NCBI GenBank assembly: GCA_037379345.1
Contig: CM074524.1
Coordinates: 3,817,635-3,881,634 of the forward strand
DNA length: 64,000 bases
Reading direction: 5' to 3'
From: Perna viridis
Taxonomy: Eukaryota
The translations under genes and the position numbers were made by a program. The notes beneath the pieces were generated by a model that was given only the letters and a program-made list of their open reading frames with translations, had not been told where the DNA came from and did not search any database. Shown piece by piece: positions 14,450 to 48,400 of this stretch (the stretch's first letter is position 1; every line of letters starts with the position of its first letter).

Positions 14450-14592
14450 NNNNNNNNNNNNNNNNNNNNNNNNNNNNNNNNNNNNNNNNNNNNNNNNNNN
14501 NNNNNNNNNNNNNNNNNNNNNNNNNNNNNNNNNNNNNNNNNNNNNNNNNNNNNNNNNNNNNNNNNNNNNNNNNNNNNNNNNNNNNNNNNNNN
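14450..14592. other. Assembly gap (N run)
   Basis: Run of N characters. Confidence 0.99.
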
Positions 14593-21400: not shown

Positions 21401-24400
21401 ACTTTCTCTATTTGAAAATAACACTATTTAATCTCTGCATCATTGCTTTGCCCAAAAAATTTCCAATAGAATGTTCGAAAAATTATTGACAGAATTATCT
21501 GCCATTGAAATGTTCATTTTCAGTGCATTTTAATGAAATTGTAACTCAATGGTCCAGCAAGATATGGAAAATATTGTTTGCCTTTCTGATGGTGCAAATA
21601 GTCATATTACACTATCAAAATGATGGGTTTTCTCATACCATGTTTCACCTACTGCCTGATTCTTACAGGACTGACACTTAATATGAATACTTTTTTTTTT
21701 TTAGATCAGCTCCTGTGAAATACTTCTCCAATGAGTTACCGATAAGGAACAGACTAAAACGGCTCTTTCTCAGGAACCCAACAACAAGTAAGAAAATTAT
21801 TTTCTCATGAATCCTACCACAAGTAAGAAAATCATTTTCTCAGGTATCCTACAAGAAGTAAGAAAATTCATTATTTTCTCATGAATCCTACCACAAGTAA
21901 GAAAATTGATTATTTTCTCAGGAACCCTACCACAAGTAAAAAAATTATTTTCTCATGAATCCTACCACAAGTAAGAAAATTATTTTCTCAGGTATCCTAC
22001 AAGAAGTAAGATAATTCATTATTTTCTCAGGTATCCTACAAGAAGTAAGATAATTCATTATTTTCTCAGGTATCCTACCACTAGTAAGAAAATTAATTAT
22101 TTTCTTGGGAATCCCACCACAAGTTAGACCATTCATTGTTTTCTTAAGAACTCTTCCAAAAGTAATATCATTTGTTGTTTTCCCATGAACCTTTCCACAA
22201 GTTAGATCATTTATTGTTTTTTTTCAAGATTTCTACCACAAGTTTGATCAATCAATATCTCTTTCAAAATAATTGAAGATATGGGGACTTCTTTTTTTGG
22301 CCTTGAAAGATGTTAAGTAAAAACTTTGCATTTAGAAAATTTAGCTTTTGCAGAATATGTCAAGAAACATTAAATGTGTTAAGCATGTTATATTTAACAC
22401 ACTTATTAGTCAATTTCTTTATCATTTCATTCAAACATTATGATTACAAAACAGGAAGTGAAGTGTAGTCATTTTTGTCAGGTAAAATTGGCTGGAGAAT
22501 TCAAATTGATAAAAAGTGTCTGTTTTGGAAAAAATGTACATCTTGGAAATTATTTTCTGAAGCTGAAATTGTTTTATTTGATTACTTAAGAGTATGTATA
22601 AATACTCTGTTTTTGAATGTTATTGGAAACGAATTTTTGGACAGGTCTAAGAATTTGTGAAAAAAGTGAAATAAAACAAAATTTGTAAATGAAGTTGGAT
22701 ACTGTTAAATTATTGATCTTTCTTTTAAATCAGTATCAATGATTAACATTCAGTTTAAACATGTAGGGGAAAAACAATTGTAAATTATATGGGAAATAAA
22801 AATTTATGATTACAGTTTCATTTTACATCATATAATCTTTGAAACTGACTGTGTATGCTACTATTTTCATAAGGATAAAAAATCTTCAGTGCTAACAACA
22901 CTTTGATTACCTTATTCTATATGTTAAAATCACATTGACTACACAAACATGACATAAAAGTCTAGGTAACATATTTCCTCATAAAAAATCACCAAAATGA
23001 ATTTTATTATTTATGGTATTCAGCTTGATGCATTATCTATCTTGTTTGCTATGGAAATCTTTCCTGTTATCATAATTATACATCAATAAAGTAGTGCTCC
23101 AGCTAAGAATCATGCGAAATGTGATTCATGGGTGAAAAGCCTACATATTTTTATTTTTGATGTTTTGTTTGAAATCCTGCAGTAAACAGAAATTAACATT
23201 CCGTTTTTAAGAAAACTCATGCTCTTAGGAGATAAGAATTATATAAAATGCACTGTAGATTTCAAATTTAAGGGAGATAACTCTGTAAATGACACTCAAG
23301 TACAATAGAATCTATTAGATTTTTAATGTTGATTATCTCCTAAGAGCAGACAGATTTGAATGAATAATTACACGTTTTATAATATAAGCCCATAAATCAA
23401 CACAATAACAAAAATAAAAATATGTAGCCTTTTTTAGGTGTATCACATTTTACAGAATTTGCATGATTCTTACAAAGACTACTACTTAAAACTTTGACAC
23501 TCTTCACAAATGGTTTTATTATCAAACATTCAAACTTAATCCATCTTAACCAAATCAATAACTTAGTGACTATTACACTGTAGAGTTAGTAAGGTATAAT
23601 AATACATCTGTATGTAACCATACTTTATCACCATAATGACATGGTCTATATGATAAGGGTAAATCTCTTGTGTCAGATTTATACCTATGGAGAAAAATTA
23701 CATCAAGAATTAAGTAGCTGTCTTTGTAAGAATCAAACAATATCTAAAAAATGTGATACACCCCAAAAAAGGCTACATATTGTTATTTTTGTAATTAAGT
23801 TGTTTTATGGGTTTATATTATGAAATGTGTTATTCATTCAAATCTGTCTGCTCTTAGGAGATAATCAACATTGAAAATCCAATAGATTCTATTGTATTTG
23901 AGTGTCAATAACAGAGTTACTGCCCTTAATTTCGAAATTTACAATGCATTTTATATAATTTTTATCTCCTAAGGGCATAGTTATATGAAAAACTGAATGT
24001 TAATTTCTATTTACTATGGCAATTCAAACAAAATATCAAAAATAAAAATATGTAGGCTTTTCACCCATGAATCACGATTTGTATAATTCTTAGCTGGAGC
24101 ACTACTTAAATGGCCTTTTAACATATTGTAATCTACTTCATTGGGTTATCTTTGTAATATTTAATATTACTCCTACTCCATATGTTTTTTTTGTATATAT
24201 AACTTTAAAATCATTATAGAAAAAAGTGTAAAAGAGAGGAATATATATGTATATGTCAAAAAGACAATGACAACAGTGGCAATGCTACAAAACAGTAGAA
24301 AAACATCAGTCGATGGGTCTACAATAAATGTTATTCAAGATCAGATTAATGGTGTAATATGCTGCATGAGTATTAAAAAATTAATGTCATTACGAACTTT

Positions 24401-27400
24401 AAAAGATTATGATATTTACTCATAGCTTTGTTTAAGCTTTAAAAAGTTGAGGTCAACTGAGGTCATGCAGATGGCAAAAATATTAGAGAAATTGCAAATC
24501 ATGGAGGCAAAAGGGACAGAAATTCAAATTGATAATTTCAAAAAAATATTTAGAATGAGGCATATTTATTGAGATGTCTTACATGTTCCGAGACGTACAT
24601 GCAGTTCCAACCTTTTTTTTTTAATAGTCATGATAAACCAGAAAAAAATTTAATCCCAAAACTTACAGTATAGTGAAATCTAGGGAGTAATACAAGAGTT
24701 TTTCTTTCGACAGGATTTGGTTTATCTAGGGAGTAATACAAGAGTTTTTCTTTAGACAGGATTTGGTTTATCTAGGGTGTAATACAAGAGTTTTTCTTTA
24801 GACAGGATTTGGTTCATCTAGGGAGTAATACAAGAGTTTTTCTTTAGACAGGATTTGGTTCATCTAGGGTGTAATACAAGAGTTTTTCTTTCAACAGCAT
24901 TTGGTTCATCTAGGGTGTAATGCAAGAGTTTTTCTTTCAACAGCATTTGGTTTATCTAGGGTGTAATACAAGAGTTTTTCTTTAGACAGGATTTGGTTTA
25001 TCTAGGAAGTAATACATTGAGTTTTTAAAGTAACGATAAACAATTCCTGTATGTGTATAATTTTAATGAAATTTATTTTGTTTTTAGGATTAGGCAGTAG
25101 AATATTTGACCTGGTAGTGAAATTCCTGATATGCCTTTTGTATGTTATCCGTGTGGAATTGGATGATGTTCAAAGTTATGCTTGGTGAGTTACATAATGT
25201 TTAGTTGTACCAGGTGCCATAAAACTGCCAAAGACAAGTATTCAAACAGAAGTTTAAAAAGCAAATCAAATCTCTCGTCATTAAAACAGTGTTCTCGGCA
25301 TGAGTGATCGTCTTTTTGGTTATTCACAATAAACAATTGCTTATCCTAGTTATTATATAGATTTTCTTCATGATTTATCGATATTTTCAATATGAATTTT
25401 TAATTCTGTGATTGACGTATTGATATCAAAGTTGTGACGTTTTGGTGGGAGAAAGAGCCGAGTGAAATTACTGATTTTATTTCATTGTGAATTATCAAAA
25501 TTTATTACACTGGGAACATTCGATAAAACACTACTATCTATATAATAGTAATAAATATATAGGTGGTTATTTTGATGAGGTTTTTATATATTATTTAGTT
25601 GAGTAATTATGACCCAAGATTATTTTTTACAATTGTTTTGTCCATAACTTTGTTTCTCTGTACCTTGACAACATCATATCTGGCAGTAATTTTCTTCCTT
25701 AAATATTTTACCCCAAGAAGAAAGATTATTATATATCAGAAATAGCACTAGAGTGCCAAGAATTCATATTTGGAGACACTTTTTCTACTTGCTATATATT
25801 TTTAAAAAAGAACTTCTGGGTGTTTTGGATAATAAACAGAAAGAAATAATTTACCCAAATGAAATCACAAATATCTTGGAGTATGTAAATAATGCATGAC
25901 ACAGGCTTTCTCGCCACAAGAAATTTCTGACAAGAAGTAGAGTATTCACATTGTATTGATAATTGAAGATTTTTTTTCTCTGTTTCAGTCAGGGACAAGA
26001 CTGTAAAGCTCACAATTTATCCCTACCAACAGACAGTGACCAGATGAAATTCTCATCAAATGCTATCAACTGGTATGTAGCAAAGTAACAGAAAATGGGG
26101 TTATCAACTGGTATCAAGTGGTATATGTTGTAGTTACAAAAAAGGGGGAGAGTCCCAACTGGTACATGTATGGGGTATTGTGGGAAAAGTGGGAGGGTTA
26201 ACAATTGGTAAAATGTATTGGGTATTGTTTCAAGAAAAGTGGGAGGTTTATCAACTGGTACATGTATTGGGTATTGTCACAAGAAAAGGGGAGGGTTATC
26301 AACTGGTACATGTATGGGGTATTGTCACAAGAAAAGGGGAGGGTTATCAACTGGTACATGTATGGGGTATTGTCACAAGAAAAGGGGAGGGTTATCAACT
26401 GGTACATGTATGGGGTATTGTTACAAGAAAAGGGGGAGAGTACCAACTGGTACATGTATGGGGTATTGTTACAAGAAAAGGGGGAGAGTACCAACTGGTA
26501 CATGTATGGGGTATTGTTACAAGAAAAGTGGGAGAGTACCAACTGGTACATGTATGGGGTATTGTTACAAGAAATGTGGGAGGGTTATCAACTGGTATGT
26601 GGTATAGGTTTTCACCAGATTAATATTATTTTGTAGACTTACTGTGATTGTAATCTGCAGTATATCACGCCTAAATATATTTTTTTGTCTGTTGATGGAT
26701 TTTCTTCGATTTCTCAAAGCAAATATAAAGGTAAACATATGTTCTTTGAAATGTGTAAAACTAGCAGGTTAATGGGAACATCAGTGCAGAGTTGGTGCTT
26801 GACTGACAATTACTATATTGATTGTACATATATAATGTTTCCTTTTTTTAATATTACTATGAATTCTCAAGTAGCTCTGTACTGGTTGCTGTAGGTATGT
26901 GATTATATGGGTACAGAGACCTCTGGCTCAATGGATACTACAAGTCTTCTTCTCAGTCATAACACTAGTCAAAGCATGCTTGGAGCTATATATAGGATCC
27001 AAGGTGAGTGCTTTAGGAGGTAGACCTTGGGTAAGGGACACAACTCTTAAAAATCATTGGAACGTTTGTATTCAGCATTTTACATCAATCTCAAGCATCA
27101 AATTAACTTGGATTGATTTCATTCTTTTTCAAATTGAAACTTGATAGGCTTTGATGAAATTGAATATGATACAAACATGTAACTGATTTCAAGAGTTGTT
27201 TCCCTTTCCTTTTGTCTACCTCCTTAACTCCTATTCAAGGCATGATTTTGACTGGAAATTTACATATGGCATAAGGTGGCAACAAAAAATATTGGTATGG
27301 TGCTAGCCATACCTCTCATACCTGCTGCTAGGTCCCTGTTTAATGTTGGTTCAGGATTATTAAGTTTTTTTAAAAGATTTTTACATTTTTAAGGTAGAAT

Positions 27401-30400
27401 CATAGATAGTGAGAATAAAGGACTAATAACCAGTTTCTATAAGGATGTGGTAAATCTGTCGCTGTTAGTTAATTTTGTAATGATTTTCGACATTTTATAG
27501 CATGTACTGAGTCATAAAGAAAATCTGAAACTAAATTAGTTTTCCAATTCATCTGCCTAAAAGTCAAAGGTCTTTGTTAAACAGCTTGAGAGCACTTGAG
27601 TTGTGACAAAATTCTTTGTTCACTTGTCTTCATAATAAGCAAACAGTTTAACTATTACTGTTCACTACTACAACTGCACTGACTGTTGGTCATGAGTTAT
27701 TCATATTCTCTCCATGCCATGCCAAAAAATATTCAAATACTATATATATGTATTTGTATATATTTGTATACTATTTATTATATTAATGTTTCATGCTGAT
27801 GATATTTTTTTACAGGGCATCTGTATTACAAAGATGACAGGTGATGGATTCATTTTAGAATTAGTTTGTTCTGTACCAATCATTGCCACGGTAAGTTGAA
27901 TCATAATATACTGATCGGCCAACATCCTTTATTACATCTGCATAATATATAGATTGGCCAACACCATTTCTTACATCTTCATTATATACAGATTGGCCAC
28001 AAAAATTTATTACATCTGCATAATATACAGATTGGCCAACATCATTTATTACGTCTGCATAATGTACAGATTGGCCAGCATTATTTATCACATCTGCCCA
28101 ATATACTGGTTGGCCAATATCATTTATTACATCAGCATAATATAAAACCATGTTGAATATTTCTAATTTCATGTTCTGGAAAATGAAAATGAAGTTAGTT
28201 GTGTCTGTTTACTTGTTGTCCCCCAATATGACATGACAGAGTGACATAGTGATGGTAAACATCTGTCTGTTTATTTGTTGTCCTGCAATGTGACATGACA
28301 GAGGCACATAGTGATGATATTACAACTGTCTGTTTATTTGTTGTCTTGCAATGTGACAAGACAGAGGGACATAGTGATGGTATATATCTGTCAGTTTATT
28401 TGTTGTCCCCCAATGTGACAAGACAGAGGTACATAGTGATGGTGTATATCTGTCAGTTTATTTGTTGTCTCCCAATGTGACAAGACAGAGGACATAGTGA
28501 TGGTATATGTCTGTTTATTTGCTGTCCCCCAATGTGACAAGAAAGAGGGACATAGTGATGGTATATATCTGTCTGTTTATTTGTTGTTCCCCAATGTGAC
28601 ATGGCAGAGGGACATAGTGATGGTATATACATTTTGTATCTGTCTGTTTATTTGCAACACTTGAAGTAAAGGACTTGGATATATTTTAATATTTCTCAAT
28701 GCTAGAACCCTTGTAGGTATATCTCCTCGGAAACCTCTGGCTGATTGCTTCCATATTTGGTAGGATATATTGTGACAAATTATTGATGTTCTTGCTATAA
28801 TATCATTTTAATTCATCAAATTTGTAGGAGTAATGGGACTTTGGCATCTTCAAATTTCATCAGTTACAAGTGACATATGACTATGTGACGTAGTAGTATT
28901 TTTATTACATTCCATGTCTTCAAAGCTATGAAATGATGCTAATTCTTTGTATTTTAGGCGTGTTATCCACCGTTACTAAAGGATCTTTTTGCTCCTTGTT
29001 TTCTACACTGCTGGTTGATGAGAAGATCTTTACAGAAATTATTTGTATGATTTTTGTTCTTGATCCTTTATAAGTTCTGAATGACTTGCTGTCTATGTTT
29101 GTCACATTTGATACACAGGCATAAAGCCAAGTAAATCTTTAAGTTTTTCATAGCTACATTATTTAGTAACATTATAATAACAGCCAATCATTTATGATTA
29201 TCAATATCTATTTATTTGGCAATCAGAACATTTGTGTTGTTTTTTTTCATTATGAATTTATTGTTTTGAATATAATGTTGAAAATACAAACACTGATCAT
29301 TCATTGGGTACAATCTTGCACAAACCTTTAGATTAACTGTTATTGCCTTTAATATCGGTACATCTCAGCTTGTGTTTTGTTTCACTTATAGCATGACCTA
29401 CATTTGACAAAGCAGAGATTTCAGACCATATCAGTCACTCTGTCACAACAGATGTTGATTTTAGTTGTTACTTTAGCATGTTTCATATTTACCACGTAAG
29501 TACTAAATGAATAATTTGTAGATTTAATGGAAGAGACTTCTGATCAGAGTTCCGATATTTTCTTCTTGTCCATGCTTTTTAGTTCACTTGTTGTCTCTGA
29601 ATTTACATGGAAGCTTTCTGATCCTATTCCTGTCCATATGTAACCTTTGATTGCATTGAAGGTATTAATTAAACTTTCACAGACTGAGAGTTTAGTGAAT
29701 AGACTATGATTGATTTCAAGGTCAGTTAGACAAAGGTCAAAAGTTCCCGAATACTAAATTTAGAATTTTCGATGACGTCCCCCATTTTTTTTTTGTGTGT
29801 GATGGCTTATATGATTGGCCAGCAAATCAAAGGTTAAGGTCACCATCTAGTATTAGTAAACAAATTTAAAGTAGAAAAATATCTTCCTTCCACTTGTTAA
29901 ACCATTATTTTACTGAACCTTGCACAAGTAAAAGCTTAAGTGTCAAGGACAACATTTTGAGGTCTAGATCAAAGTTCAGGGACAACTTTTACAAATAGAA
30001 TTTCCTCTACTTTGTTTGTCCCTTTCTTTGGTAGAGTAATCGAGGGAACCTGGATTCTAGTGGAAATCAAAAGAATGTAATCCAGGGACAAAGACCAGAC
30101 ATGGAAAATAGACACACACAACATAGAACATAAAATAACCAAAATAATACACACAAAGTAACAAAAGCAAATGAACAACTCAGACTCCACTAAAAACTGG
30201 GAGCATAGACCAGGTGCACTGGTAAGGTAAGGGCTCTCTGCTTTTCTAGAAACACCTGCTGAGTTGCTCATAAAAGTCCAATTCAAGGTAGACAAGAGGA
30301 AAGGATAACTATGACACGTTGACAAATCAGTTTTCATGGTGAAGATGGATATACCATAACAATCCACAAGTTTATGATAACCACAAAACTTCTGTAAGAT

Positions 30401-33400
30401 GACATAAATCTTGTAGCAACAAAACCATGTTCCAGAAGCCTAATTGTAAGAAGTCTAGCATGTTACAAAATGTCTGTGTAGTTACAGTAAGCTATAGCAT
30501 AAAGTATGAGTTGTATAAAAACTCCATACAGAGATGATGAAGGAATATTGTCAGAGATGAAAGGAAAGTTGACAATACAGAATGAAAAGTCATCACATTT
30601 GTCTTACGGTTTGGTCAATAGTTTTGGCGTTTTAAATTCAATTTAAAGACTAGCCATATTTAAACTTTTTATTTCAGTATATGTGGTATACAACATATCC
30701 AACGAGGTAGTGCTAGCCACCCCCTTGCCATGTTTGAATCAGTATATTTTGTGATTGTAACATTCTCCACAGTAGGCTATGGTGATATATCTCCGGATAC
30801 TTGGCTTGGACAGCTCTTTATGACATTCATGATCTGTTTTGCTTTTGCCTTTATTCCTAGACAGGTAAGATCACTGATAGCCCTGTATTAGGAAAATATC
30901 CTTTATGACACATGTACAGAGAATTTACAATGATTTTTTCTGCAATTTTGATAAAAAGGTGAACACAGGAACAGGGAAATTTTGCCCTGTGCAATTGAAG
31001 TTGTTTTTAAAGAATACTCTGAAATTCAATTTCATTTTACTTTTCACTTTCAAAATAATGACAATGGACAATTATATACAAAATAGATCGTGGGTTAATT
31101 CCACTACATGTATTGGCAGTGTTTTCTTAGCTTTCATCAACCACAATCACCACCAGGCACACTGAATCATATAGAATTAGCTTACAGTTTATTTGTATGA
31201 CATGCACTACACAATCATTGCTTATGTATTGTTTTTGTTTGTACATAACTAAGATAATCTTTCCTTTGTAGATAGGATTTTTAAACAGCAGATGTTGAAT
31301 AAAAGCATTTGCATAATCTTCTCAGGTTTTTGACAATTTGCTGAGTACAGGTGTGAAAGGGTACATTTACCGTATTCTTCCGTGTATAACACGCATCTGT
31401 GTATTCCGCGCACCCCTTTCTTGGCAAGGGAGATCGGCGAAAAAAGTTAGTTTCTGTGTAAAACGCGCACTGGGAAGCGAGGAAAAATCACCAGCAGAAA
31501 ACCATATTGAGATGAAAGGATTCCGGTAAATCCCCGAAATGCGTATCTTTTTATCATTAATCTTTTAAATAAAAGTATTTTCTATGTTTCCCTGCGTTTG
31601 CAAGTCATTTATTAATTAAAGTAGTTTATAAATGGCGATGTATTGGATCTGAGTCAGCTAAAATGTTTATATTTCTTGTTCGAATACAAATCAGGTAATT
31701 CACTAAAACAATGGCGTCAAGTCCGACCGTTTATAAAAAGATGTTTTAATTTGCCAAGTTGTGTATTGATATCTGACATCTGTAAACAGTTCATCAAGCG
31801 GATTAAAGCATTATTAATAATTGTTTCACCTTTTAAATTGATCTTTTGTTATTTGATAATTAAATGACAATAGGCCCGAGGACAGGTTGGCACTCCCGGT
31901 ATTGTGTATTTAACAGTCTATCGCACACAGGTGAAGAAGTTATAATTAGACGACTTGATTTGAGAGAACAATAAGAAGCTAGTCTTGGGTTTTCGTACGA
32001 AATATGAAATGCAAGGAAATGGCATTGATGGATAAAACAACTATTAAATAGCAGTAAAACTTTATTTGTTTATTTCACATAAAACTGTTCTCAAAAATGC
32101 AATGGCTCGATGTTGTCTTTAGTTGACGACTTTGGTTCTGATTCCCGAAAATTACGGACCTGAAAATTACGTCTCTAGAAAAAAAATCTAGAAACTCTTT
32201 GTTTTGGTGTATACCGCACATCCCTCTTATGGTGCAGAGAAAAAGTTGAAAAAAAGTGTGCGGTATACACGGAGGAATACGGTAATTTTGATGGAAACCA
32301 GTTATTAGATAGCCAAACCTATGTAAGATTTTTTTATCCAATATTTTAGATAGAGGGAATAATGTCAACCTGGAGGGAGAGGAAGAAGACAGGTGGGGAA
32401 TACAGTAAAAATGATGCTCTTGGTCATCGACATGTTGTTGTGTTCAGTAGTCATCTGACAGCAGATAATGTTATGGACTTTCTATTGGAGTTCTATGCTC
32501 ATCCAAAGTTAGAGGTATTTATCTAATTTCTAGTTTATATCCCCACTTTGCAAAGTTGGGGATAAATAGTATGTTTTTCTGAACTATAATCGTCTATGCA
32601 AGAAGTGAATGAGGAAAAAAGAAGCTTTTTCTTGAAGCACTTAATTTATTTGCTTTCCTAGTTCTCAAGTTTTTAACAAAATTAGTAGAAAATTTAAAAG
32701 CTGGAAGTATAAATGAAGGAAAATCTGTTGACAGCCGAATAAAACCACAAAAATAAAATATACATCACAACAGTACCAAAAAATAACACACAATAAAACA
32801 AACAACACAGACAAAATAAAGTTCTGACAAGTTTACAAATAAAGTATCCATGAAATAAATAACAAAAAGGTTTAAGCCTACTAAAACTGAACTTTCAATA
32901 CTGACAATCTTACTGTATTTTAGGAGGTAGACCTAGGGTAAGGGACATAACTCTTGAATCAGTGATATGTTTGTATCATATTCAATTTCACCAAAGCCTA
33001 TCAAGCTTTCATTTGACACAGAATGAAATCAATCCATGTGACTGTGGTGCTTACATGAAATGGATGTAAACCACTGAATACAAACATTCCAATGATTTGT
33101 AAGAGTTGTGTCCCTTACCCTAGATCTACTCCTTAATAAGCACAAAATCATTAGCAGTAACTAACAAGGTTTATATATAATAACAAAACAAAACAGATTG
33201 TGATTTTGTAATGTTTTACCAGAATAAGATTTTAGTAAAAAATTACCTTTACAGGAACATATAGTAATGTTTGTCAGTTCTGATAAAAACTTTTCTTTGC
33301 AGGAACATATAGTAGTGTTTGTCAGTTCTGATAAGAACTTTCCTTTACAGGAACATATAGTAATGTTTGTCAGTTCTGATAAAAAACATACCTTTACAGG

Positions 33401-36400
33401 TACATATAGTAATGTATGTCAGTTCTTATGAAAACTTATCTTTACAGGAACATATAGTAATATTTGTCAGTTCTTATACAAACATACTTTTACAGGAACA
33501 TATAGTAGTTTGTCAGTTCTGATAAAAACATACCTTTACAGGAACATATAGTAGTGTTTGTCAGTTCTGATAAGAACTTTCCTTTACAGGAACATATAGT
33601 AATGTTTGTCAGTTCTGATAAAAACTTACATTTACAGGAACATATAGTAATGTATGTCATTTCTTATGAAAACTTATCTTTACAGGAACATATAGTAATA
33701 TTTGTCAGTTCTTAAACAAACATACTTTTACAGGAACATATAGTAGTTTGTCAGTTCTGATAAAAACATACCTTTACAGGAACATATAGTAGTGTTTGTC
33801 AGTTCTGATAAGAACTTTCCTTTACAGGAACATATAGTAATGTTTGTCAGTTCTGATAAAAACTTACATTTACAGGAACATATAGTAATGTTTGTCAGTT
33901 CTTATGAAAACTTATCTTTACAGGAACATATAGTAATGTTTGTCAGATCTGATACAAACATATTTTACAGGAACATATAGTAGTGTTTGTCAGTTCTGAT
34001 AAAAACTTTCCTTTACAGGAACATATAGTAATGTTTGTCAGTTCTGATAAAAACATACCTTTACAGGAACATATAGTAATGTTTGTCAGTTCTTACGAAA
34101 ACTTATCTTTACAGGAACATATAGTAATATTTGTCAGTTCTGATACAAACATACTTTTACAGGAACATATAGTAGTGTTTGTCAGTTCTGATGAAAACTG
34201 ATCTTTACAGGAACATATAGTAATATTTGTCAGTTCTGATAAAAACATACTTTTACAGGAACATATAGTAGTGTTTGTCAGTTCTGATGAAAACTTATCT
34301 TTACAGGAACATATAGTAATGTGTGTCAGTTCTGATGAAAACTTACCTTTAAAGGAGCATATAGTAATGTTTGTCAGTTGTGATAAACCCTTTCCTTTAC
34401 AGGAACATATAGTAGTGTTTGTCAGTTCTGATGAAAAGGATAGTAATCTTCAGGTGATATTAAAGGATCCCAAGTGGGTCAACAGGGTTGTTTACATCCA
34501 AGGATCCGCTCTGAAAGATATAGATCTGAAGAGATGTCGGTAAGTCCTTGTAACTTAATGACAATTGACTTGTATTTGTTTTCCACGTTTTTGTTATAGA
34601 ATTAATAGTATTTAACTTGAATCTTGATAAGAAGAGGGTGGTATATCATGCTGGAGCACAGCTACTTATGATAAGGGCTAGGATTAAATTTTAAATAAAA
34701 AAGACCCAGATGAGCTGTTAATCATGACAGTATGTGTAAAATTGAAAAAAAGAAAAGTTTTAACAAGATATTACAGTTTTGCTTTAATTTTTATGGCATG
34801 TGTAAAATTTTGTGATTTTGATGCAAAAAGGTATAAGAAAAATGTTGACATTTTTAATTTTGGTGAATGATAACTGGTGCGCTAAGTACCTAAGCCCAGG
34901 ATAAATATTTTGTGGAATTTAATTTGATGTTATTAAGGCAGACCTCTAAAATTTGTGAAAATTAATACCCACTACAGTTTATAATGAAACTTTGAAACTG
35001 ACCATATTTATCATGTTGGCTATATTAATGTTTTGGTGATATTTTCAGGATTCAGGAAGCTGACGCATGCTTTATTCTATCTCCTAGTTTCTACGAAAAC
35101 AGAGAAGAAGCTGTAAGTCATTTTTTATGGTAGAGAAGGGCTACTACATGTTTCTGGTTTTTCAATATTATTTTTCATCAGTCTACCAATTTATTGTTTT
35201 TCCTACATCGTCATCATGGTGATTCAAAATTTTTCTTCGTTCTTTGTGATCTCTTGCTGGATTTCTCAACAAGATAATAGTAGACCATGGATATAAATAC
35301 TAGTACAGTAGTCTCTCAGTGAAATGGTCCACCGACTAACGGCCACCCACTTTATGCAACCACATTTCAATTGCATTAACGATTTATAGTGCAAATTGAC
35401 CCATATATAAATGGCCACCCATCTGACGTGACCAGCGGCCTCAACTTTTAATGAATAACAAAGATCTGGCCTCTCATAACCAGCCATGTTCATTGCGGTA
35501 TATGAACTGTAGATGTCAGCGGAGATTGAGTTGAGCGTTTTTTCCGCAGTATATTTTCAATTAAGTTATCGACTTGAGTGTCTATTGCTCTGAAGGCCTT
35601 AGGCATAGATCAGCACATGTGCAAAATTGTAAACTGATGAATCAGACATAATTACAATTGATAATTAATAATATAAAAATGACCAGGTATTTAAAATTAC
35701 AAACAAAAGTTATTACCTTTTTAATCTGTTTGCAATTTAGCCATTAATGTTACACTTTTAATTGATTATAGTTAAGACCACATGAGAATGTGTTACAACA
35801 TACTGTAAGTGCACACAAATTGCATATTGAAGGACCGATAACTTGGAAATACTCGATCTGATAATGTTTTACATGTAAAGAATATTACAACCTGTCTTTT
35901 ATTGTTTGTTTATATATTCTAACGGTTTAAAAGTTAGCACTCGTTAAATATAGGCATTCTTTGGCACTTTTTTATTTTAGTTATCCACTCTTTCCAATTA
36001 ATTATCCTATTATTATTGATGAAATGTACATGTTTTTTATCATAGGATGAACATTCCATTATGAGATCCTGGGCAGTTAAAGATTTTGCACCAGATTGTA
36101 GACAGTATATACAGCTGTTTAAAACAGAATACAAAATACATGTGACATTTGCAGGTTTGGATCAGTGATGTTGTAGATTTATTTATTTTATTTATTTTTT
36201 AGTCTTAGTTTTATTTTTGACGTAATTTGTTCAGTGTTTCATCATGTTTTATTGTAGATTTATATTTTTTATGATACAAAATTAAAATAAAGGACCCAAC
36301 CCTAGACCGCTTGGTGACAAGCCAGTGGCAAACCCAATCGTCTAAAGAATTAATCTTTTAGCTAATTCAATTAACTGGCTATTTAAATCTCACTACCTAC

Positions 36401-39400
36401 TACAAAGCAGATAGGCCTTCCTGCGCCAATTTATTGTCTTAGTTCTGAGCACTTTAGTTCATTTCATTTTTAATATAACTTCCTTAATATTTTTGTGTGT
36501 TTTCCATATAAATATATTTAGTTTGCATTTTGTTTGGTATTTATCTGTTACATGCATTTTTTCTCTTTATTTTGTATTTTATGTTTTCTATTATTTTGTC
36601 ACTTTTTGTTGTTTGTTTTTGTTACTGTAGAGCATGTAGTCTGTGCTGATGAATTCAAGTATGCTTTGTTAGCCAACAATTGTTTGTATCCTGGATTATC
36701 TACCCTTGTTACATTGCTTCTACATACCACCACAGAACAGTATGTTTATACACACATTCAAACAATTACTTATATCACATCATAATAGTAGGCTATACTT
36801 TTTTATTCTTGTGGATTTGTCCATCTTTCTTTCACCTTTTTCTCTGTGACTGCTCCTCATCTCATGAAAATTTGATTTATACAAGATACAGTCGAACTTC
36901 ACTCACTCGAACTTGGATGGCTCAAACACCCGGGAATTCTCGAACACAATTCAAAGTACCAAAATTTTCTCCTATATAATCAATATAAATAACCTTGGAT
37001 TTCTCGAACTTTGATTTCTCAAAAACTCGAACTGACTAGTCGGTCCGTTCGGTAATAAATCTCAGAGGATAAACCTCACTAACTCGAACTCGTCAGCCAT
37101 TTTGTCAGGTTGGGTAATAGAAGGTGTGAAAAACTGAAACCCTATCATTAATCAGTGTCATTTTAGTTAATTACAGGTAATATTTAAGTCATCACTTATT
37201 AGGTAGTTTTGATAAAACTGATTGAAGTTCGAGAAAGTTCCGAAGTCAGTATGATAAAACCATGAAAGAAATTCGGATGAAAACAAATTATTGACCAATG
37301 AACCCACACTCTGGACGTTTTTAAAAGAAAACACAGCATTTTTAATGTCCACAAATCAACATAATCATCCGAAAGCGAATGAAAAAGATCCATGAACTAA
37401 CACAATTTCGGAGGAAGTAAGCAATTTCTAATGATAAAGTCGAACTCGGACCGGCAACGACAGAAATCCGGAAATATACGAACTTCAATGTCTCGAACTC
37501 CCGTTAACTCAAACACATTTCAATGGTCCCTTGGAGTTCGAGCTACCGAGGTTTGACTGTATATGTATGCCAAAGAATGAGATGGGATTTCTTCCCAGGT
37601 GACATAACCTTGAAGAAAGTGTGATTATCTTTAAAATATGTTGTCTTCTTCATGAAAACCATTTATCACACTTCAATACAAAGGTCTTTGGTATATTTGA
37701 CAAAAAGTGATAAGTGTAAAACTTGTGGTTACAATGCTATTTTCTGTCATGATGGCTAACTTATGACTAATTCTACACTTATGGCTTTTGTGAAATAAAC
37801 TGCTGGAGTTCTATGGTTTTTGGTTAACATGTTCTTTCTAATATCTTAACACAAGTTCTTTCTAATATGTTAACAGAACAGATTGGGGTAATAAGGTATT
37901 CAAAGTTTCCTTTCTGTTTCTGAAAGATTTTCAAGCAAAAAAATCTCACCCTCACAAATATTCTTTACATATGAACACTATACAATGTTTATGGCCTATT
38001 ACATTACTTACTTTAGAATAGCCACAGATTACAAGGAGCAATGGCAGCAGGTTTATGGTAGACATGCAGGGAACCAGGTTTACCATATCCAGATCTGTAA
38101 AAGTGTCTTTTTTAGATCATATATCGGGAAGCCTTTCACATCAGCTTCAGAAGGTGCACACAGAAGGTATGCTAACACTTCAGATTTAATATAGATAAGT
38201 CCTTCTGATAATCAGTCTCAGAGGGATAACACAGAAGGTATGCTCTCACTAAAGATGTAATACAGATAAGTCCTATTAATCTTTTTCAGAGGGCTTACAC
38301 AGAAGGTATGCAGAGGTGTTTACTTATACAGATGTTCGGTATTTTTACGGATTTTGACTGCAAATTACGCTCTACAGATTGTGAATATCTCCATAGTATC
38401 TGTTAAAATTTCAGAAAGTTAAGGATTTTACGAATCATTTCCATAGAATACTGTGAAAAATATGGATTGTCATCATGTAGTATAAACAGGTCTTGGTATG
38501 TTAACAGACTTCAGATTTAATACAGATAAGTCCATGTAGTGATCAACACAAGATATATGTTAGTACTTCAAAACCTATACAAGTGGTCAGTTGGTTAATG
38601 AACTGATGTTATTCTTTGAATGATCATTGACCAATAATGGGTTGAATATATAGCTGCAGATCAAAGTACGAAAAATCAATCTAAATAAAAGAACAGGTAT
38701 TGTGTTTCAGATTTGGAGTGTGTCTTGTGGCCGTCCTGGACATTACTAAACTGGACCCACGCCTACAGTTAAACCCTGGACAGGAATACATCTTGAAAGA
38801 ATCTGACTACTGTTTCTATATCGGCGAGTTTAAAGAGGAATATTCTAAAGTCTGCCATGATGTCACATCAACTCCACATCTACAGAAAACAGATAATGAT
38901 AAAAGTCACAAGAATTTAGGTGCAGATTGCTTTTTTTATCAGTGTTTGTTTTTACATTGAGCCACAAAGGGAAATGGCTGAGGCTTTGTAAACCAAAATT
39001 GCTCATGCTAATTTTTTTTTCAAAATTAATAGTTACAAAAATGGTAGTCAATCATGTTTGTTAAAAATTTTATCTTCAAGTCTGTGGCATGTTGAATAGT
39101 TAGTTTTAAGTTTAACTTTATCTTCTCTTGACAGAGCATATATCAGAGGTTCTAGAGAAACTACTACAGCATGAGTTAGAAGTCGATGATGTGGAGGAAG
39201 AAAGTGTGTTCAATAATACAATAACATTCCAATGGGGTCAGGAAATAGCACGTCGTGTACGAAGGAACTCAGAACAGAACGGTGAAGATGAAGTTCAAAC
39301 AGATATTAATGTAAATGTGATTAATTCTCAGGTGGACACACACTGCCACAGTGATTCAACAGCACCTAAAGTATTACAGATCTACAATGATATGGGACAG

Positions 39401-42400
39401 GAAGAGTAAGTTAACCTGTATACTGACACAGTCAGTACCAGTACTTCCGTCCACTCCCATCTATTACCTCTAACCTTTATACTGACAGTCAGTACCAGTA
39501 CTTCCCTCCACTCCAATCTGTTACCTCTAATCTTTATACTGACCCAGTTGGTACCATTACTTCCCTCCACTCCCGGCTACTACCTCTATCTTTATACTGA
39601 CCAAGTCAGTACCAGTACTTCCCTCCACTCCCGGCTACTACCTCTATCTTTATACTGACCAAGTCAGTACCATTACTTCCCTCCACTCCCGGCTACTACC
39701 TCTATCTTTATACTGACCAAGTCAGTACCAGTACTTCCCTCCACTCCCGGCTACTACCTCTATCTTTATACTGACCAAGTCAGTACCATTACTTCCCTCC
39801 ACTCCCGGCTACTACCTCTATCTTTATACTGACCAAGTCAGTACCAGTACTTCCATCCACTCCAAGCTATTACCACTCTTATTTCTTGTTTGACAGGCCT
39901 TCTAGTTTTTTATACACTAAAATAACAATCTTATATAAGTATTGTAAACTTCTATATGCTGTGTATGTATTTCAAATAATAACCTTTTATCAGCAACACA
40001 TTAGAAACGCATACATAGAAAGATTGAAATCTAAATATAAAAGTGCTTATAACCCAGAAATTGAAGCCAAATCCAGCACCAAGAAGTACCACGTGTAATA
40101 CAAGGAATGAACCCTGAGTGTTATTTGTGATTTGGAAGTTTATAATACTGTACTGCAAAATTTGGTAAAAAGTATATGATATAATGCAAGTCGAGTCTGA
40201 CCACCGGGGGTGAATAAAAGTAACTAATTGAACTGAAAAATATGTGGTTTTAAAACCAAAACAGAACAATTTCTCTCTGGTATTTTATACTTTCTCTTTT
40301 CAAGCCTTTTAAAACTTGCTTTCTATTACAGGACTTAGACTTATAGAAATTTCATTTAGGTAGCAGTCTTTATAAAAGTCAGACAGGAGGTGATTCTTGC
40401 ATGTCAAAAACCTACAAAATTCACTTTTATTTCTTGTTCAGAAACAGCTATAGACTACTTAATCAGTCTTAGCTTTTCATTTGGGTGTTGCACTTTTGAG
40501 ATAAAATTTATATAGATTGTACATGAAATAAGCACTTTACAAGAGTTATTGCCCTTGATGTGGTTTGATTTGGTTGATGTAAGTGGGAGGTTAAAGAGTA
40601 GTTTTCTCAAAAATACAGGTCTAAATACAGAAAAGACTATGATCACATAAAAAGATAGCATATGTAGACCACAAAAGCATTGTTTGTTCTGTGGGTTGTT
40701 CTACACCATGAATCACGTCTTCCATATCTGACTTTTATATGGACTGATACTTAAGTCATCATTAAAGTTAACTTATTTTGATATGCTTTAATTTTGCTTG
40801 TTTAGGATAGTTGTAAGTTTGTTATCAACTGGTTCTTTATTAAAGGTTTACAACTGGTCCCCCTCCTACCACTCTCTATGTTGGGAATAGAAGAACCATT
40901 TGTCACATTTTGAAAAATCCAAGGAAGAAATGTTGTCTTAAATGGGGAGAGGTAAGTTACACTGGAAAATAACTTGTTGTTCAGACATGAAAAAATTAGA
41001 TTTTGACCCAAAGTTGATATTCACCGTAAATATCCCTTGAAAGTCTGGAAGCTTATTTCCAGTGTGGACTCTACAAGGAAAAATAACTTACAGGTTCAAA
41101 AATAAAAATGAAGAATCTAATCAAGATTTGGGTAGGGGCACAATTGTAAATACAATAATTCAAAAAATATGTCAAAGATTTTACATTTTATTATAGATTT
41201 TGGAACACTCTACATATGAAAAATATCTTAGGGGAAATGGTATTGAACTCATATACACATGGACTGGTTCATTATATTCAATTATTTTATATCAAACATT
41301 AACAACCTTGGTCGTTCCACCTTGAAGGGACCATTCAAATATTGAGAATTGGAGAAACTGAAGTTCAAAGTTTTCCAGAATTTTTCGTTTATAAGGTTGA
41401 GTTCTGCTTTGGATATCTTTCAATTAATTTTCTTCAACTCTTTCATCATGGTACTTCAAAACTTTTTCCAGCATCAATTGGGGTACTGTATTCAATTTAA
41501 ATCACCTAATAAGTTAGGACGTAAACACACTCCTTGAAATGTTCACCTTTCCCATTTTAGCATTCCAGCATCATTTATCGTGCATTTACATATCCTTTTG
41601 CATTTGTTTAATGATGAATGCACAATAAAAGTGTTCATTTATTTTTGTACGTCCATTATTTTCCTTATTCAATTGTTATTTTTATATTTTTTTTTGCCAT
41701 TAGTATTTTTCATTTTTTTTTTTTTTTATTTAATTCAATTTTTTTTTCTTCATTATTTTTTTAACATTATAATTTTTTATTGTTTGTCTATCATGCATTT
41801 AAATGCACACTAACAGCGTTCTATTATTGTTCATTGAAACCCACGCTGGCAGCGTTCTATTATCATTCATTTAAACCCACACTGGCAATGTTCTATTATC
41901 GTTCATTTAAACGCACGCTGGCAATGTTTTATTATCGTTCATTTACACCCATGCTGGCAGCATTCTGTTATTGTTCATTTACACCCATGCCAGCAGTATT
42001 CTATTATTCATTTAGACACACAATAGAAGCATTCATTTAAACACATGATAGAAGCATTCATTTATCATGTGTTTGGTGAACATTTAGTGTGCTTCTAGGT
42101 ATCCTTAGTATTGGAAACCTAAACATCTCAAGGAGTGTATTACATGTAACCATTTAATTAATAATCTGGCTCCAGTTATTTACACCTTTTATTACTCAAG
42201 CTGACAAAATGGTGGACAGATTAAAGTTGGCATGGAATATTCTCTCAAGATTTATTAACATGTGAAATAACTATTGAAGCTTGTGATTAGTAATTCATGC
42301 ATTTCTTAATCCCAATTTTTTTTTATTTGAAATCCTTCAGTAGGCCTCATAGAAACTGTATTCGACAATAAGTGTTTTAATGAAAGGTGGTCACTGGAGA

Positions 42401-45400: not shown

Positions 45401-48400
45401 CAAAGAATCTCTTGGGGATATGGAAGAGACAATGGTAGATTCACAGACAATAGTAGCCGTTCAGACAATACTCAAGTAAGACTCTGTTACAGACAGACAA
45501 TATTCAAGTAAGACTCTGTCACAGACAGACAATACTCAAGTAAGACCTTGCCACAGACAGTGGTAGCTGTTCAGACAATACTCAAGTTAGACTCTGTCAC
45601 ATACAATAGTAGCTGTTCAGACAATGCTCAAGTAGGACTCTGTCACAGATGGACAATACTCATGTAAGACCTTGCCACAGACAGTGGTAGCTGTTCAGAC
45701 AATACTCAAGTTAGACTCTGTCACAGACAATAATAGCTGTTCAGACAATACTCAAGTTAGACTCTGTCACAGACAATAGTAGCTGTTCAGACAATACTCA
45801 AGTTAGACTCTGTCACAGACAGTAGTAGCTGTTCGGACATTTTTTAAAGTAAGACTGTCACAGACAATAGTAGCTTTTCAGACAATACTCAAGTAAGACC
45901 TTTCCACAGACAGTAATACCTGTTCAGACATTACTCAAATAAGACTGTCACAGACAATGGTAGCTGTTCAGACAATACTCAATTAAGACTCTGTCACAGA
46001 TAATAGTATCTGTTCAGACTGCTCAAGTAAGATTCTGTTACAGACAGTAGTAGCTGTTCAGACAATACTCAAGTAAGACTGTCAAAGACAGTAGTAGCCT
46101 TTCAAATAATACTCAAGTAAGACTGTCACAGACAATAGTAGCTGTTCAGACAATGCTCAAGTAAGACCTTGCCACAGACAGTAGTAGCTGTTCAGACAAT
46201 ACTCAAGTAAGACTGTCACAGACAATAGTAGCTTTTCAGACAATACTCAAGTAAGACCTTTGCACAGACAGTAGAAGCTGTTCAGACAATACTCAAATAA
46301 GACTCTGTCACAGGCAATAGTAGCTGTTCAGACAATACTCAAGTAAGACTCTGTCACAGGCAATAGTAGCTGTTCAGACAATACTCAAGTAAGACTCTGT
46401 CACAGACAGTAGTAGCATTTCAGATAATACTCAAGTAAGACTCTGTCACAGACAGTAGTAGCATTTCAGATAATACTCAAGTTAGACTCTGTCACAGACA
46501 ATAGTAGCTGTTCAGACAATGCTCAAGTAGGACTTTGTCACAGACAGGCAATACTCTAGTAAGACTCTTTCACAGACGGACAATACTCAAGTAAGACCTT
46601 GCCACAGACAGTAGTAGCTGTTCAGACAATACCCAAGTAAGACTGTCAGAGACAGTAGTAGCCTTTCAGACAATACTCAAGTAAGACTGTCACAGATAAT
46701 AGTAGCTGTTCAGACAATGCTCAAGTAAGACCTTGCCACAGACAGTGGTAGACAATACTCAAGTAAGAAGTAAGACTCTATCACAGACAGTGGTATTTGT
46801 TCAGACAATACTCAAGCAAGACTGTCACAGACAGTAGTAGCTGTCTCTTTTACATCTACACCATACCTATTCTCATTATATATTACATTAACATGCTTTG
46901 TGATTTTTTTTTCTGTTTTAAAGAAAAGATTATTTAGATGTTATCTCCACATAATACAATACAAAGTTCAAAGATCAAGTATTTTATTTTACAAATCACA
47001 GGCTCACAGGAATAGTGACCAAACAATATTTATAATTTTTAAATACACAGATACATTGTACATTTATATAGACATTCAATAATAGTTTTTTTTTACAACC
47101 ATGTACAATTATTGCAAGTAGATTTTTTGATAATACACAATATATTTGTATCTATTGTATAGAATGTTTCCCCATACTAACATCATCACAGAGCTAAGCC
47201 AGGCAACAAACATCAGATTCATGCAGTTCCAGGCCAATAATGAGTACAACAAATATGTGTCTAGGATGGAAAAGGTACATATAATATGAAGTAGGAGGGA
47301 ATACTAGGTTCAAACATTTAAAAACAGATGGACCATATGAGTATTTTAGGGTAGAAGACAAGAATTCTATTTTATCATGTTGTATATACATGTCAATATG
47401 AAATAAATTTGTATGAAGTATTTTATTCTTTTTATACCCACTTTGTTTGTGGAAATTTATAGTGATGGGGTGTCTGTCCGTTCTTACTTCCTTCCATTAT
47501 ACAGAAGTGACCCATCTCTCATCAGTTACTCCTTCTACACCACTGAATGGTATTGAAAACTTCACAGATTCATTATTACATGTTCCCATTATGCACCTCC
47601 TATTCTAGATTTTGATCCAAATTAATACAGAGGATAAAAGGTGCATGTTGTGAAATGAGGGAGTGGGTTATCAAATTAGTGAGCATTGCTTACAGTTTTT
47701 ATAGTTTGTGTTAGTAGATAGTATAGCAGTGTTAACATGAATGATGGTGGTGTTGATGAAATCATAGACCACAGAAATTTTCTTCCCTGACAATAACTTG
47801 AATATTATGTTAATAATTGTCTCAACTGTTCAGATTTAAACTCAATGGTAGTATCTGGTTGTGTCCCATGTAGCATGTTATTTTTCCCATTAGAAAATAA
47901 ATTTAAATTGTTCATTCAGAAGCATGAAGATCTGCCGTCAGATATTATACTTTTTTGATTGATTCAGTACATGAGTATTTTGATTGAATGCTTTACCTAT
48001 AATAGTTTCTTATTGGGATCTCATACATAGCATTTGTTAAATGATTTATAATAATTAAGTGTCTTTCCTGGGAAGAATCAGGCAATGAATGAAACATGGT
48101 ATGAAAAAAAACCATCATTTTGATAGTGTAATTTGACTAGTTGCACCATCAGATTCAAGTGGTATGAAAAAAAACCATCATTTTGATAGTGTAATTTGAC
48201 TAGTTGCACCATCAGATTCAAGGAAAACAGATAAGATTTTCCATATCATGCTGGACCATTGAGTTACAATATCATTGAAATGCACTGAAAATGAACATTA
48301 CAAGGGCAGATAACTCTGTCAAAAACCTCATTTTTCAGACATTCTGTTGGAAAATTTCTGAACAAAGCCAGTGATGCGGAGATTAAAAAGTGTTATTTTC

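What the first reader, a model, noticed from the sequence alone, without database searches (positions are those of the whole stretch)
33246..34436. 25 tandem 3' splice sites before exon 11; the last four would give in-frame 16-aa insertions in RCK1
Seen: the 48 nt unit (16 codons) is tttacag|GAACATATAGTA...TCTGAT. Acceptors giving exon starts at 34211, 34259, 34307 and 34355 (AAG) are in frame and stop-free to the true start at 34403. They would add 4 to 1 copies of EHIV(M/V)FVSSD(E/K)N(L/I)xLQ. More distal acceptors hit TGA at 34199 or a frameshift. A 5-unit (~238-240 bp) higher-order periodicity is visible. Established: 3' site choice usually favours the first AG after the branch point, so skipping about 24 upstream look-alikes requires exon definition. 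Inference: possible length-graded isoforms of the gating ring.
Basis: partly seen in the sequence, partly recalled or inferred. Interest (0 to 1): 0.8.

Follow-up and report, generated by a model that had tools for sequence, protein, structure and literature searches.

The report
Splice-site-copying minisatellite in mussel channel gene
A 48-base stretch spanning the start of one exon of a mussel-type Slo2/KCNT potassium-channel gene has been copied 25 times in a row, and it is one of at least seven such exon-edge repeat arrays in this gene, a repeat type ("mirage") so far described, in the papers I could search, only in amphioxus and a few human genes, and more likely a by-product of repeat growth than a designed set of isoforms.

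Summary
A 48-nt tandem array (33236-34437, 25 copies) repeats the last 13 nt of intron 10 plus the first 35 nt of exon 11. This gives 24 decoy acceptors upstream of the real one at 34403. The last four decoys are in frame and stop-free, a TGA at 34199 blocks the next five, and a 5-unit higher-order repeat exists.

The gene is the ortholog of Mytilus KCNT1-like (Slo2). Exon 11 encodes part of RCK1.

The interpretation needs changing. The array is absent from three relatives, which have a single acceptor with a long pyrimidine tract. The exon-derived codons in the decoys show no coding constraint (1 synonymous against 44 non-synonymous codon differences). All 13 annotated Mytilus isoforms have the plain junction.

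The array is also not special to this exon. Seven of the 14 large arrays in the gene span an exon edge, six of them donors, against about one expected (P about 1.5e-5). Relatives carry such arrays at other edges.

This matches the "mirage" minisatellites of amphioxus and the human F7, IFI6 and CBS boundary minisatellites. I found no bivalve report in the searchable library.

Low-level use of the nearest decoys remains possible. No transcript data for this species could be reached.

The parts
32350..32514 (+). Exon 10 of the KCNT/Slo2-like gene. It ends ...AHPKLE and is followed by the donor GTATTT.
   Evidence: tblastn of the Mytilus ortholog P0138 gives 94.5% identity; sequence read.
32515..34402 (+). 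Intron 10 (1888 nt). Its last 1167 nt are the tandem array.
33236..34437 (+). 48-nt minisatellite with 25 copies. The unit is the last 13 nt of the intron (short pyrimidine tract plus AG) plus the first 35 nt of exon 11. Its distal part shows a 5-unit higher-order repeat.
   Evidence: TRF; unit alignment and lag analysis; block identities; pattern scan.
34211..34402 (+). The four proximal decoy units, with acceptors placing exon starts at 34211, 34259, 34307 and 34355. They are in frame and stop-free and would add 64, 48, 32 or 16 residues. The nearest one has the weaker AAG acceptor.
34199..34201 (+). In-frame TGA that closes the reading frame for decoys at 33971-34163.
34403..34539 (+). Authentic exon 11 (137 nt), part of RCK1. 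It is followed by the donor GTAAGT at 34540.
   Evidence: PDB KCNT1 gating ring 5a6e/5u70/8hir, E 4.6e-6 to 1e-5; 95.8% identical to Mytilus P0138; Pfam PF22614 on the orthologous exon.
21766..22165 (+). Sister array: 39 nt x 10.7, copying the 3' end of exon 2 plus its donor (CAA|GTAAGA). The authentic donor follows 21787.
   Evidence: z = 20.7 against intron controls
26085..26597 (+). Sister array: 48 nt x about 10.7, copying the end of exon 4 (TATCAACTG) plus GTAYRT. The authentic donor follows 26072. TRF calls 26133-26597, and degenerate copies fill 26085-26132.
   Evidence: z = 5.7
38158..38311 (+). Sister array: 71 nt x 2.2, copying ACACAGAAG|GTATGC. The authentic donor follows 38168.
   Evidence: z = 21.2
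45441..46844 (+). Sister array: about 46 nt x about 30, copying the last 32 or so nt of an RCK2 exon (...VAVQTILK) plus CAA|GTAAGA. The authentic donor follows 45475.
   Evidence: z = 24.9
49445..49616 (+). Sister array: 35 nt x 4.9, copying ...GHLSS plus AGT|GTAAGT. The authentic donor follows 49467.
   Evidence: z = 25.1
58909..62429 (+). Sister array: 75 nt x 47, copying nearly the whole small exon 58900-58981 (...[17 protein letters not shown]) plus its donor. 39 copies keep AGT|GTAAGT, and the units contain an in-frame TAA.
27902..28144 (+). Edge-adjacent array (39 nt x 6.2) starting 12 nt after the donor of exon 6. It does not contain the donor, and derivation from the exon is uncertain.
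39419..39874 (+). Edge-adjacent array (58 nt x 7.9) starting 14 nt after the donor at 39405. It does not contain the donor.

Best explanation
This is a 'mirage'-type minisatellite, a tandem array whose founding unit straddled the intron 10 / exon 11 boundary of a mytilid-type KCNT/Slo2 channel gene.

Shown:
- A 48-bp piece (13 nt of intron end plus 35 nt of exon start) was duplicated in tandem.
- The array then grew away from the exon into the intron, most recently by amplification of 5-unit blocks.
- The copy contiguous with the rest of the exon is the one that corresponds to the ancestral acceptor.
- Every upstream copy is a passenger that also carries a complete 3' splice-site module: a CTGAT branch-point-like motif supplied by the exon-derived part, a short pyrimidine tract, and an AG.

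Inferred: the last copy wins for three reasons.
- It has the best pyrimidine tract.
- It gives the shortest exon for pairing with the downstream donor at 34540.
- Only it adjoins the unique exon body.

Inferred consequences: distal decoys, if used, give a premature stop or a frameshift, and such transcripts would be removed by nonsense-mediated decay. The four nearest decoys would give in-frame +16 to +64 residue products, which I expect to be minor or absent. Being in frame is a by-product of the unit length (16 codons), not a designed isoform ladder.

The array is one instance of a process that has put such arrays on at least seven exon edges of this gene and on other edges in relatives.
For: - Array anatomy.
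- Direction exon to array: the same exon start is present with a single acceptor and a long pyrimidine tract in M. edulis (L007), L002 and L005.
- The authentic site has 13 of 18 pyrimidines at -20..-3 with a run of 11. Decoys have 9-11 of 18 with runs of 4-9. The gene's other acceptors average 12.5.
- No coding constraint in the decoys: 1 synonymous against 44 non-synonymous codon differences.
- Seven of 14 large arrays span an exon edge against 0.97 expected under uniform seeding, P = 1.5e-5. Leaving out the flagged array gives 6 of 13, P = 1.2e-4.
- Relatives carry the same kind of array at other edges: exon 9 acceptor in L002, exon 11 donor in L005/L006, exon 13 acceptor in M. edulis.
- Literature: amphioxus mirages include an acceptor-type case (BflGb6) and do not disturb splicing by RT-PCR (PMC3087553; PMC3902484). 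Human F7, LAMIN B2 and PDGF boundary minisatellites use only the authentic site (PMC1557585).
Against: - No transcript of this species was reachable, so use of only the last acceptor is inferred from orthologs.
- In human IFI6 (6-16) and CBS, the one or two pseudo-sites nearest the authentic site are used (PMC1557585). The four nearest decoys here give exons of 185-329 nt, so some use is plausible.
- The strong preference of arrays for exon edges is not explained by plain random slippage. It leaves room for a selected role or a junction-linked mutational process.
- The nearest upstream branch-point-like motif of the authentic site is TTGTGAT, a poorer match than the decoys' TTCTGAT.
Confidence: 0.75

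Rival explanations
1. One reading: the array is a functional set of alternative 3' splice sites. Graded use of the last four adds 16-64 residues in front of the first exon-11-encoded strand of RCK1, giving length-graded channel isoforms.
For: The last four decoys are in frame and stop-free. They would define exons of 185-329 nt, within usual exon sizes. Proximal pseudo-sites are used in human IFI6 and CBS boundary minisatellites.
Against: The array is absent in three relatives. Thirteen Mytilus isoforms and a relative's transcript have only the plain junction. There is no coding constraint. Decoy pyrimidine tracts are weaker, and the nearest decoy has AAG. Six sister arrays in the gene have unit lengths of 35-75 nt, several not divisible by 3, and the 75-nt array carries an in-frame TAA.
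Confidence: 0.07
2. The edge arrays are selected splicing-control elements. Reiterated decoy sites act as landing pads or sinks for U1/U2AF that tune recognition of the neighbouring authentic site in long AT-rich introns.
For: Arrays sit on exon edges far more often than uniform seeding predicts. Many decoys keep intact splice motifs: 39 of 47 donors in the 75-nt array and 21 of the 24 decoy acceptors here.
Against: Positions differ between relatives and none is shared. Decoys decay, with lost AGs in the M. edulis exon 13 array. Two edge-adjacent arrays contain no splice site. In the F7 study no autonomous regulatory element was found in the neighbouring intron sequence (section list).
Confidence: 0.1
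3. Assembly artefact: the array, or its copy number, was created by mis-assembly of repetitive reads.
For: Tandem arrays are error-prone in assemblies. Only one haplotype was seen.
Against: Units differ by consistent substitutions and indels arranged in a higher-order pattern. There are no Ns nearby. Arrays of the same kind occur in independent assemblies: the M. edulis genome and two separate metagenome samples with the same duplication.
Confidence: 0.03
4. Reverse direction: a pre-existing intronic satellite or transposon-borne repeat was recruited, and the first 35 nt of exon 11 derive from it.
For: A MITE-like hairpin (36-nt arms) lies about 100 nt upstream of the array.
Against: The exon start is conserved in relatives that have no array. 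The unit occurs nowhere else in the window. No terminal inverted repeats flank the array.
Confidence: 0.01

Closest known systems
Amphioxus 'mirage' minisatellites (Adh3, Canestro et al. 2002 as cited in PMC3087553; globin genes BflGb6 and BflGb9, PMC3087553; TnC and PGBD5, PMC3902484)
   Same: They are tandem repeats whose units span an exon-intron boundary, at either 5' or 3' edges. BflGb6 is the same acceptor type (3' end of the intron plus 5' part of the exon). Splice signals are reiterated, several loci are affected per genome, and units show concerted evolution.
   Different: The phylum differs (cephalochordate against mytilid-type bivalve). The amphioxus cases have 2-6 copies of 10-160 bp units, against 24 decoys here and up to 47 in a sister array, with at least seven arrays in one gene. 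Regular splicing and length polymorphism were shown experimentally there and are not shown here.
Human F7 intron 7 37-bp VNTR (PMC1557585)
   Same: The first unit of the minisatellite spans the exon boundary. Identical pseudo splice sites are reiterated, and only the exon-adjacent one is used. It serves as a natural model for splice-site choice.
   Different: It is donor-side with 5-9 repeats. The 5'-to-3' scanning explanation offered for donors does not carry over directly to an acceptor array, where the site used is the last one transcribed.
Human IFI6 (6-16) and CBS intron 13 boundary minisatellites (Turri 1995 and Yang 2000, as summarised in PMC1557585)
   Same: The authentic site is followed by many pseudo-sites (25 in 6-16), and the one or two nearest the authentic site are used as well.
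   Different: They are donor-side with short units, and their use was shown by transcript analysis. No transcript evidence exists here.
NAGNAG and other tandem alternative acceptors (from my own knowledge; not looked up)
   Same: Closely spaced alternative AGs give in-frame length variants.
   Different: Those are 3-nt steps that share one branch point and pyrimidine tract. Here each 48-nt step has its own full 3' splice-site module.

Membership tests
Boundary-spanning ('mirage') minisatellite | Head-to-tail tandem array of a minisatellite-sized unit | tested here: met
   TRF: period 48, 25.1 copies, 87% matches. 23 ungapped unit matches against 0 in shuffles.
Boundary-spanning ('mirage') minisatellite | The terminal unit straddles an authentic exon-intron boundary, so each unit is exon part plus intron part with the splice signal | tested here: met
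   The unit is 13 nt of intron end plus 35 nt of exon start. The exon is authenticated by orthologs and by the single-acceptor state in relatives.
Boundary-spanning ('mirage') minisatellite | The splice signal is reiterated in the copies | tested here: met
   24 of 24 upstream copies keep AG, and 21 of them (22 with the authentic site) read TTTACAG|GAACAT.
Boundary-spanning ('mirage') minisatellite | Regular splicing persists through the exon-adjacent copy | not testable with these tools
   No transcript of this species was found in the protein and contig collections. Only orthologs show the plain junction.
Boundary-spanning ('mirage') minisatellite | Length instability or polymorphism | not testable with these tools
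   Only a single haplotype is available. Indirect signs are the 95-97.5% identical 5-unit blocks and the absence of the array in relatives.
KCNT/Slo2 (Slack/Slick-type) K+ channel, RCK1 region | Sequence homology of the exon to RCK1 of KCNT1, placed directly after the pore exon | tested here: met
   phmmer against PDB hits 5a6e, 5u70 and 8hir at E 4.6e-6 to 1e-5. Pfam PF22614 is recorded on the orthologous exon. The exon map against Mytilus KCNT1-like P0138 gives 70-100% identity per exon.
Regulated tandem alternative 3' splice sites giving in-frame isoforms | Two or more acceptors that keep the frame | tested here: met
   34211, 34259, 34307 and 34355 are in frame and stop-free.
Regulated tandem alternative 3' splice sites giving in-frame isoforms | Conservation of the alternative sites in related species | tested here: not met
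   M. edulis, L002 and L005 each have a single acceptor.
Regulated tandem alternative 3' splice sites giving in-frame isoforms | Transcripts that use the alternative sites | not testable with these tools
   No transcript data exist for this species. A 110-residue query made of four units plus the exon found no protein containing repeated units.

The most novel reading that the evidence does not exclude
Exon edges in this bivalve lineage, as in amphioxus, are hot spots for the birth of minisatellites through a process linked to the splice junction itself. The resulting decoy arrays are used at a low level, so that copy-number variation between individuals grades the amount or length of Slo2 channel products.
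Probability: 0.25. Interest if true: 0.7.

Novelty: new member of a known kind. Interest (0 to 1): 0.45.

Why it matters
A natural run of 25 near-identical, complete 3' splice-site modules is the acceptor-side mirror of the human F7 donor minisatellite, which was used to work out 5' splice-site choice. It would allow first-come, branch-point scanning and exon-definition models to be compared on a native gene. At least seven exon edges of one gene carry such arrays, about seven times the uniform-seeding expectation, and relatives carry them at other edges. The 'mirage' phenomenon may therefore extend beyond amphioxus and may reflect a junction-linked mutational or persistence bias. It also matters for practice: gene predictors and short-read aligners will be misled by such arrays, and one database protein model already shows exact tandem duplications at the homologous exon.

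Tried and rejected
- I searched for transcripts or ORFs of the window's own species. The full HMMER scan with four units plus the exon and the word search with the same query found only relatives and no protein with repeated units.
- Two metagenome DNA scans, one for the unit and one for unique exon 11 sequence, found nothing.
- The M. trossulus locus could not be fetched because the gene spans 127 kb, and isoform X3 was not on record. A shorter M. edulis gene model gave the locus instead.
- Rfam at gathering thresholds found nothing in the window.
- The original amphioxus Adh3 paper is not held, so it is cited through PMC3087553.
- The array at 24678-25026, 62 nt upstream of exon 3, looked by eye like an acceptor copy, but its similarity to the edge is at control level (z = 0.1). 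It is not counted.
- The arrays at 27902 and 39419 score above controls only because the edge probe overlaps their first copy. They are counted as adjacent, not spanning.
- The edge-enrichment test is not informative for M. edulis, where two of the arrays have 500-nt units.
- Species identity stays open. The window is about equally distant from Mytilus (P0138) and from the species of P0002.
Full report
**Observation.** The stretch 33236-34437 is a tandem array of a 48-nt unit with 25.1 copies, 87% matches and TRF score 1821.
- The exon-start motif occurs 25 times, at 33255 through 34403. Spacing is 48 nt apart from single steps of 49 and 47 nt and two of 46 nt.
- A 30-nt unit pattern with up to 3 mismatches hits 23 times, only inside the array, against none in 100 shuffles.
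- Every upstream copy keeps an AG, and 22 of the 25 copies (21 decoys plus the authentic site) read TTTACAG|GAACAT.
- Reading from 34211, 34259, 34307 or 34355 gives open, in-frame 16-residue repeats that run into the exon.
- Copies at 33971-34163 are in frame but meet the TGA at 34199. Earlier ones are shifted or meet stops.
- The 5-unit periodicity is real. Lag-5 identity is 0.916 against 0.86-0.89 at other lags, and the distal 239-nt blocks are 95.4-97.5% identical.
The only correction is that exon 11 ends at 34539.

**The gene.**
- Exon 11 matches RCK1 of KCNT1 (Slo2.2) in solved structures 5a6e, 5u70 and 8hir, at E 4.6e-6 to 1e-5.
- The whole-library scan and the word searches place the gene among mollusc KCNT-like channels.
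- The closest named protein is M. trossulus KCNT1-like XP_063407916.1 (P0138), which maps exon by exon onto the + strand at 70-100% identity.
- The window therefore comes from a mytilid-type bivalve that is not Mytilus itself. The species was not determined.

**Direction of copying.**
- The unit is the last 13 nt of intron 10 plus the first 35 nt of exon 11.
- Three relatives have the same exon start behind a single acceptor with a long pyrimidine tract and no array. They are M. edulis (L007), an 8.3-kb metagenome contig (L002) and a third species (L005).
- So the exon edge was copied into the intron, not the reverse, and this happened in this lineage.
- No inverted repeats flank the array, and its unit is not found elsewhere in the window.

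**The array is not alone.** TRF lists 14 large arrays inside the gene, covering 20% of its span.
- Seven of them copy an exon edge together with its splice signal. Six are donor-side: exon 2, exon 4, and the exons ending at 38168, 45475, 49467 and 58981. The seventh is this acceptor array.
- Internal units of these seven match their exon edge far above intron controls, with z from 5.7 to 32.8 and 0 of 400 controls reaching the observed score.
- Two further arrays begin 12 and 14 nt after a donor.
- Suppose founding units arose uniformly along the pre-expansion gene. About 0.97 arrays would then span one of the 53 edges, against 7 of 14 observed, P = 1.5e-5. Leaving out the flagged array gives 6 of 13, P = 1.2e-4. 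Adding seven small arrays gives P = 8e-5.
- The null assumes uniform seeding, and the edges are mapped from protein alignments to within a few bases.

**Relatives show the same habit at other edges.**
- L002 has a 40-nt x 4.8 array on the acceptor of exon 9.
- Two separate metagenome samples (L005, L006) have a two-copy duplication of the exon 11 3' end plus its donor.
- M. edulis has a 119-nt x 3.6 array on the acceptor of exon 13. Several of its decoy AGs are lost, and the last decoy carries an in-frame stop.
- None of these positions is shared with the window.

**Known kind.**
- Tandem repeats spanning exon-intron boundaries were named 'mirages' in amphioxus: Adh3, the globins BflGb6 (acceptor type) and BflGb9, TnC and PGBD5.
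- The authors reported that they do not disturb splicing, are unstable in length, and arise by an unknown mechanism (PMC3087553; PMC3902484).
- Human genes with a minisatellite whose first unit spans a donor are F7, IFI6 (6-16), CBS, LAMIN B2 and PDGF.
- In F7, LAMIN B2 and PDGF only the authentic site is used. In 6-16 and CBS the one or two nearest pseudo-sites are used as well (PMC1557585).
- Searches for such arrays in bivalves returned nothing. That library is incomplete, so this is absence of a found report, not proof of novelty.

**How the acceptor is probably chosen (inferred).**
- Each unit supplies a CTGAT or CTTAT motif 20 nt upstream of the next AG, so each decoy is a complete module and first-AG scanning cannot explain the choice.
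- The authentic site has the best tract: 13 of 18 pyrimidines at -20..-3 with a run of 11. Decoys have 9-11 with runs of 4-9, and the gene's other acceptors average 12.5.
- The authentic site also gives the shortest exon (137 nt) for pairing with the donor at 34540. The nearest decoy has AAG.
- Distal decoys would yield premature stops, and I expect such transcripts to be cleared by nonsense-mediated decay.
- The four proximal decoys would give exons of 185-329 nt and in-frame products. If any leak occurs it should be there, by analogy with 6-16 and CBS.

**The isoform idea.** The evidence points against a designed ladder.
- The array is lineage-specific.
- All 13 annotated isoforms of three Mytilus species and a relative's transcript contig (L001/P0002) have only the plain KLE|EH junction. 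The Mytilus variation lies at the N-terminus and in a 17-residue cassette that corresponds to 51064-51126 here.
- The exon-derived codons of the decoys differ from the real exon at 1 synonymous and 44 non-synonymous codons. These counts include differences inherited through block amplification, so they are not independent events.
- The frame is kept because 48 is 16 codons and the last ten units have no indels.
- The sister arrays have units of 39, 48, 71, 46, 35 and 75 nt. Several of these are not divisible by three, and the 75-nt array, the one checked, carries an in-frame TAA.
- I could not test use of the decoys in this species.

**Origin.**
- The excess of arrays at exon edges is the unexplained part.
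- Candidate explanations are a junction-linked mutational bias, longer persistence of arrays whose anchor copy is held constant by selection on the exon, or selection for decoy sites. The data here do not separate them.
- One possible trace of the founding event: AAGTACAG lies both inside the small exon 58900-58981 and just after its donor, at the join of the 75-nt units.

All protein comparisons were made exon by exon by reference or with database proteins.
- The N run at 14450-14592 was left untouched.
- No contig was taken to be human. Some mammalian KCNT2 proteins appeared in a hit list, and nothing was fetched for them.

Noticed in passing
window 21766-22165; 26085-26597; 38158-38311; 45441-46844; 49445-49616; 58909-62429: Six further tandem arrays each copy the 3' end of an exon together with its donor site, giving about 10, 10, 2, 30, 4 and 46 decoy donors. 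The 75-nt array repeats almost a whole small exon 47 times.
   Followed up: yes
window 27902-28144 and 39419-39874: Two arrays begin 12 and 14 nt downstream of a donor without containing it. Whether they derive from the exon edge is unclear.
   Followed up: partly
L002 2194-2384; L005 555-690; L007 9179-9607: Relatives carry edge arrays at other positions of the same gene: the exon 9 acceptor (40 nt x 4.8), the exon 11 donor (2 copies, seen in two independent samples), and the M. edulis exon 13 acceptor (119 nt x 3.6, with decayed AGs).
   Followed up: yes
window 33400: One decoy unit reads TTTACAG|GTACAT, an acceptor directly followed by a donor-like GT, as at recursive splice sites. It is a single copy and probably a chance A-to-T change.
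   Followed up: no
window 32920-33136: A MITE-like hairpin lies about 100 nt upstream of the array, with 36-nt arms 86% complementary, 145 nt apart, and a nested 20-nt pair.
   Followed up: no
window 5112-5255, 7988-8331, 10014-10266 (-), 11503-11819: A dispersed repeat occurs in at least three or four copies upstream of the gene. The copies share an open frame reading ...AEDAYPTGAPG..FLVESELLI... and probably belong to a transposon or SINE family.
   Followed up: no
window 53689-54051 and 54814-55281: Two copies of a repeat about 1.1 kb apart share frames reading ...[33 protein letters not shown] on + and a matching frame on -. They lie in the long intron before the exon at 58014.
   Followed up: no
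window 6024-6505, 9449-9646, 24678-25026, 28202-28629, 41789-42012, 44011-44461, 48097-48222: These further minisatellites (units of 30-63 nt) show no detectable link to an exon edge. Arrays make up 20% of the gene span.
   Followed up: partly
protein P0003 (1275 aa, metaclust): A database KCNT-like protein model contains two exact tandem duplications, one of them a 38-residue block homologous to exon 11. This may be a read-through of an edge array or an assembly artefact in another animal.
   Followed up: no
window 51064-51126: This small exon corresponds to the 17-residue cassette (DLFTNEPQITMKKLFKL in Mytilus) that is skipped in 3 of the 13 annotated Mytilus isoforms.
   Followed up: partly
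window 14450-14592: A run of 143 N lies upstream of the first mapped coding exon.
   Followed up: no
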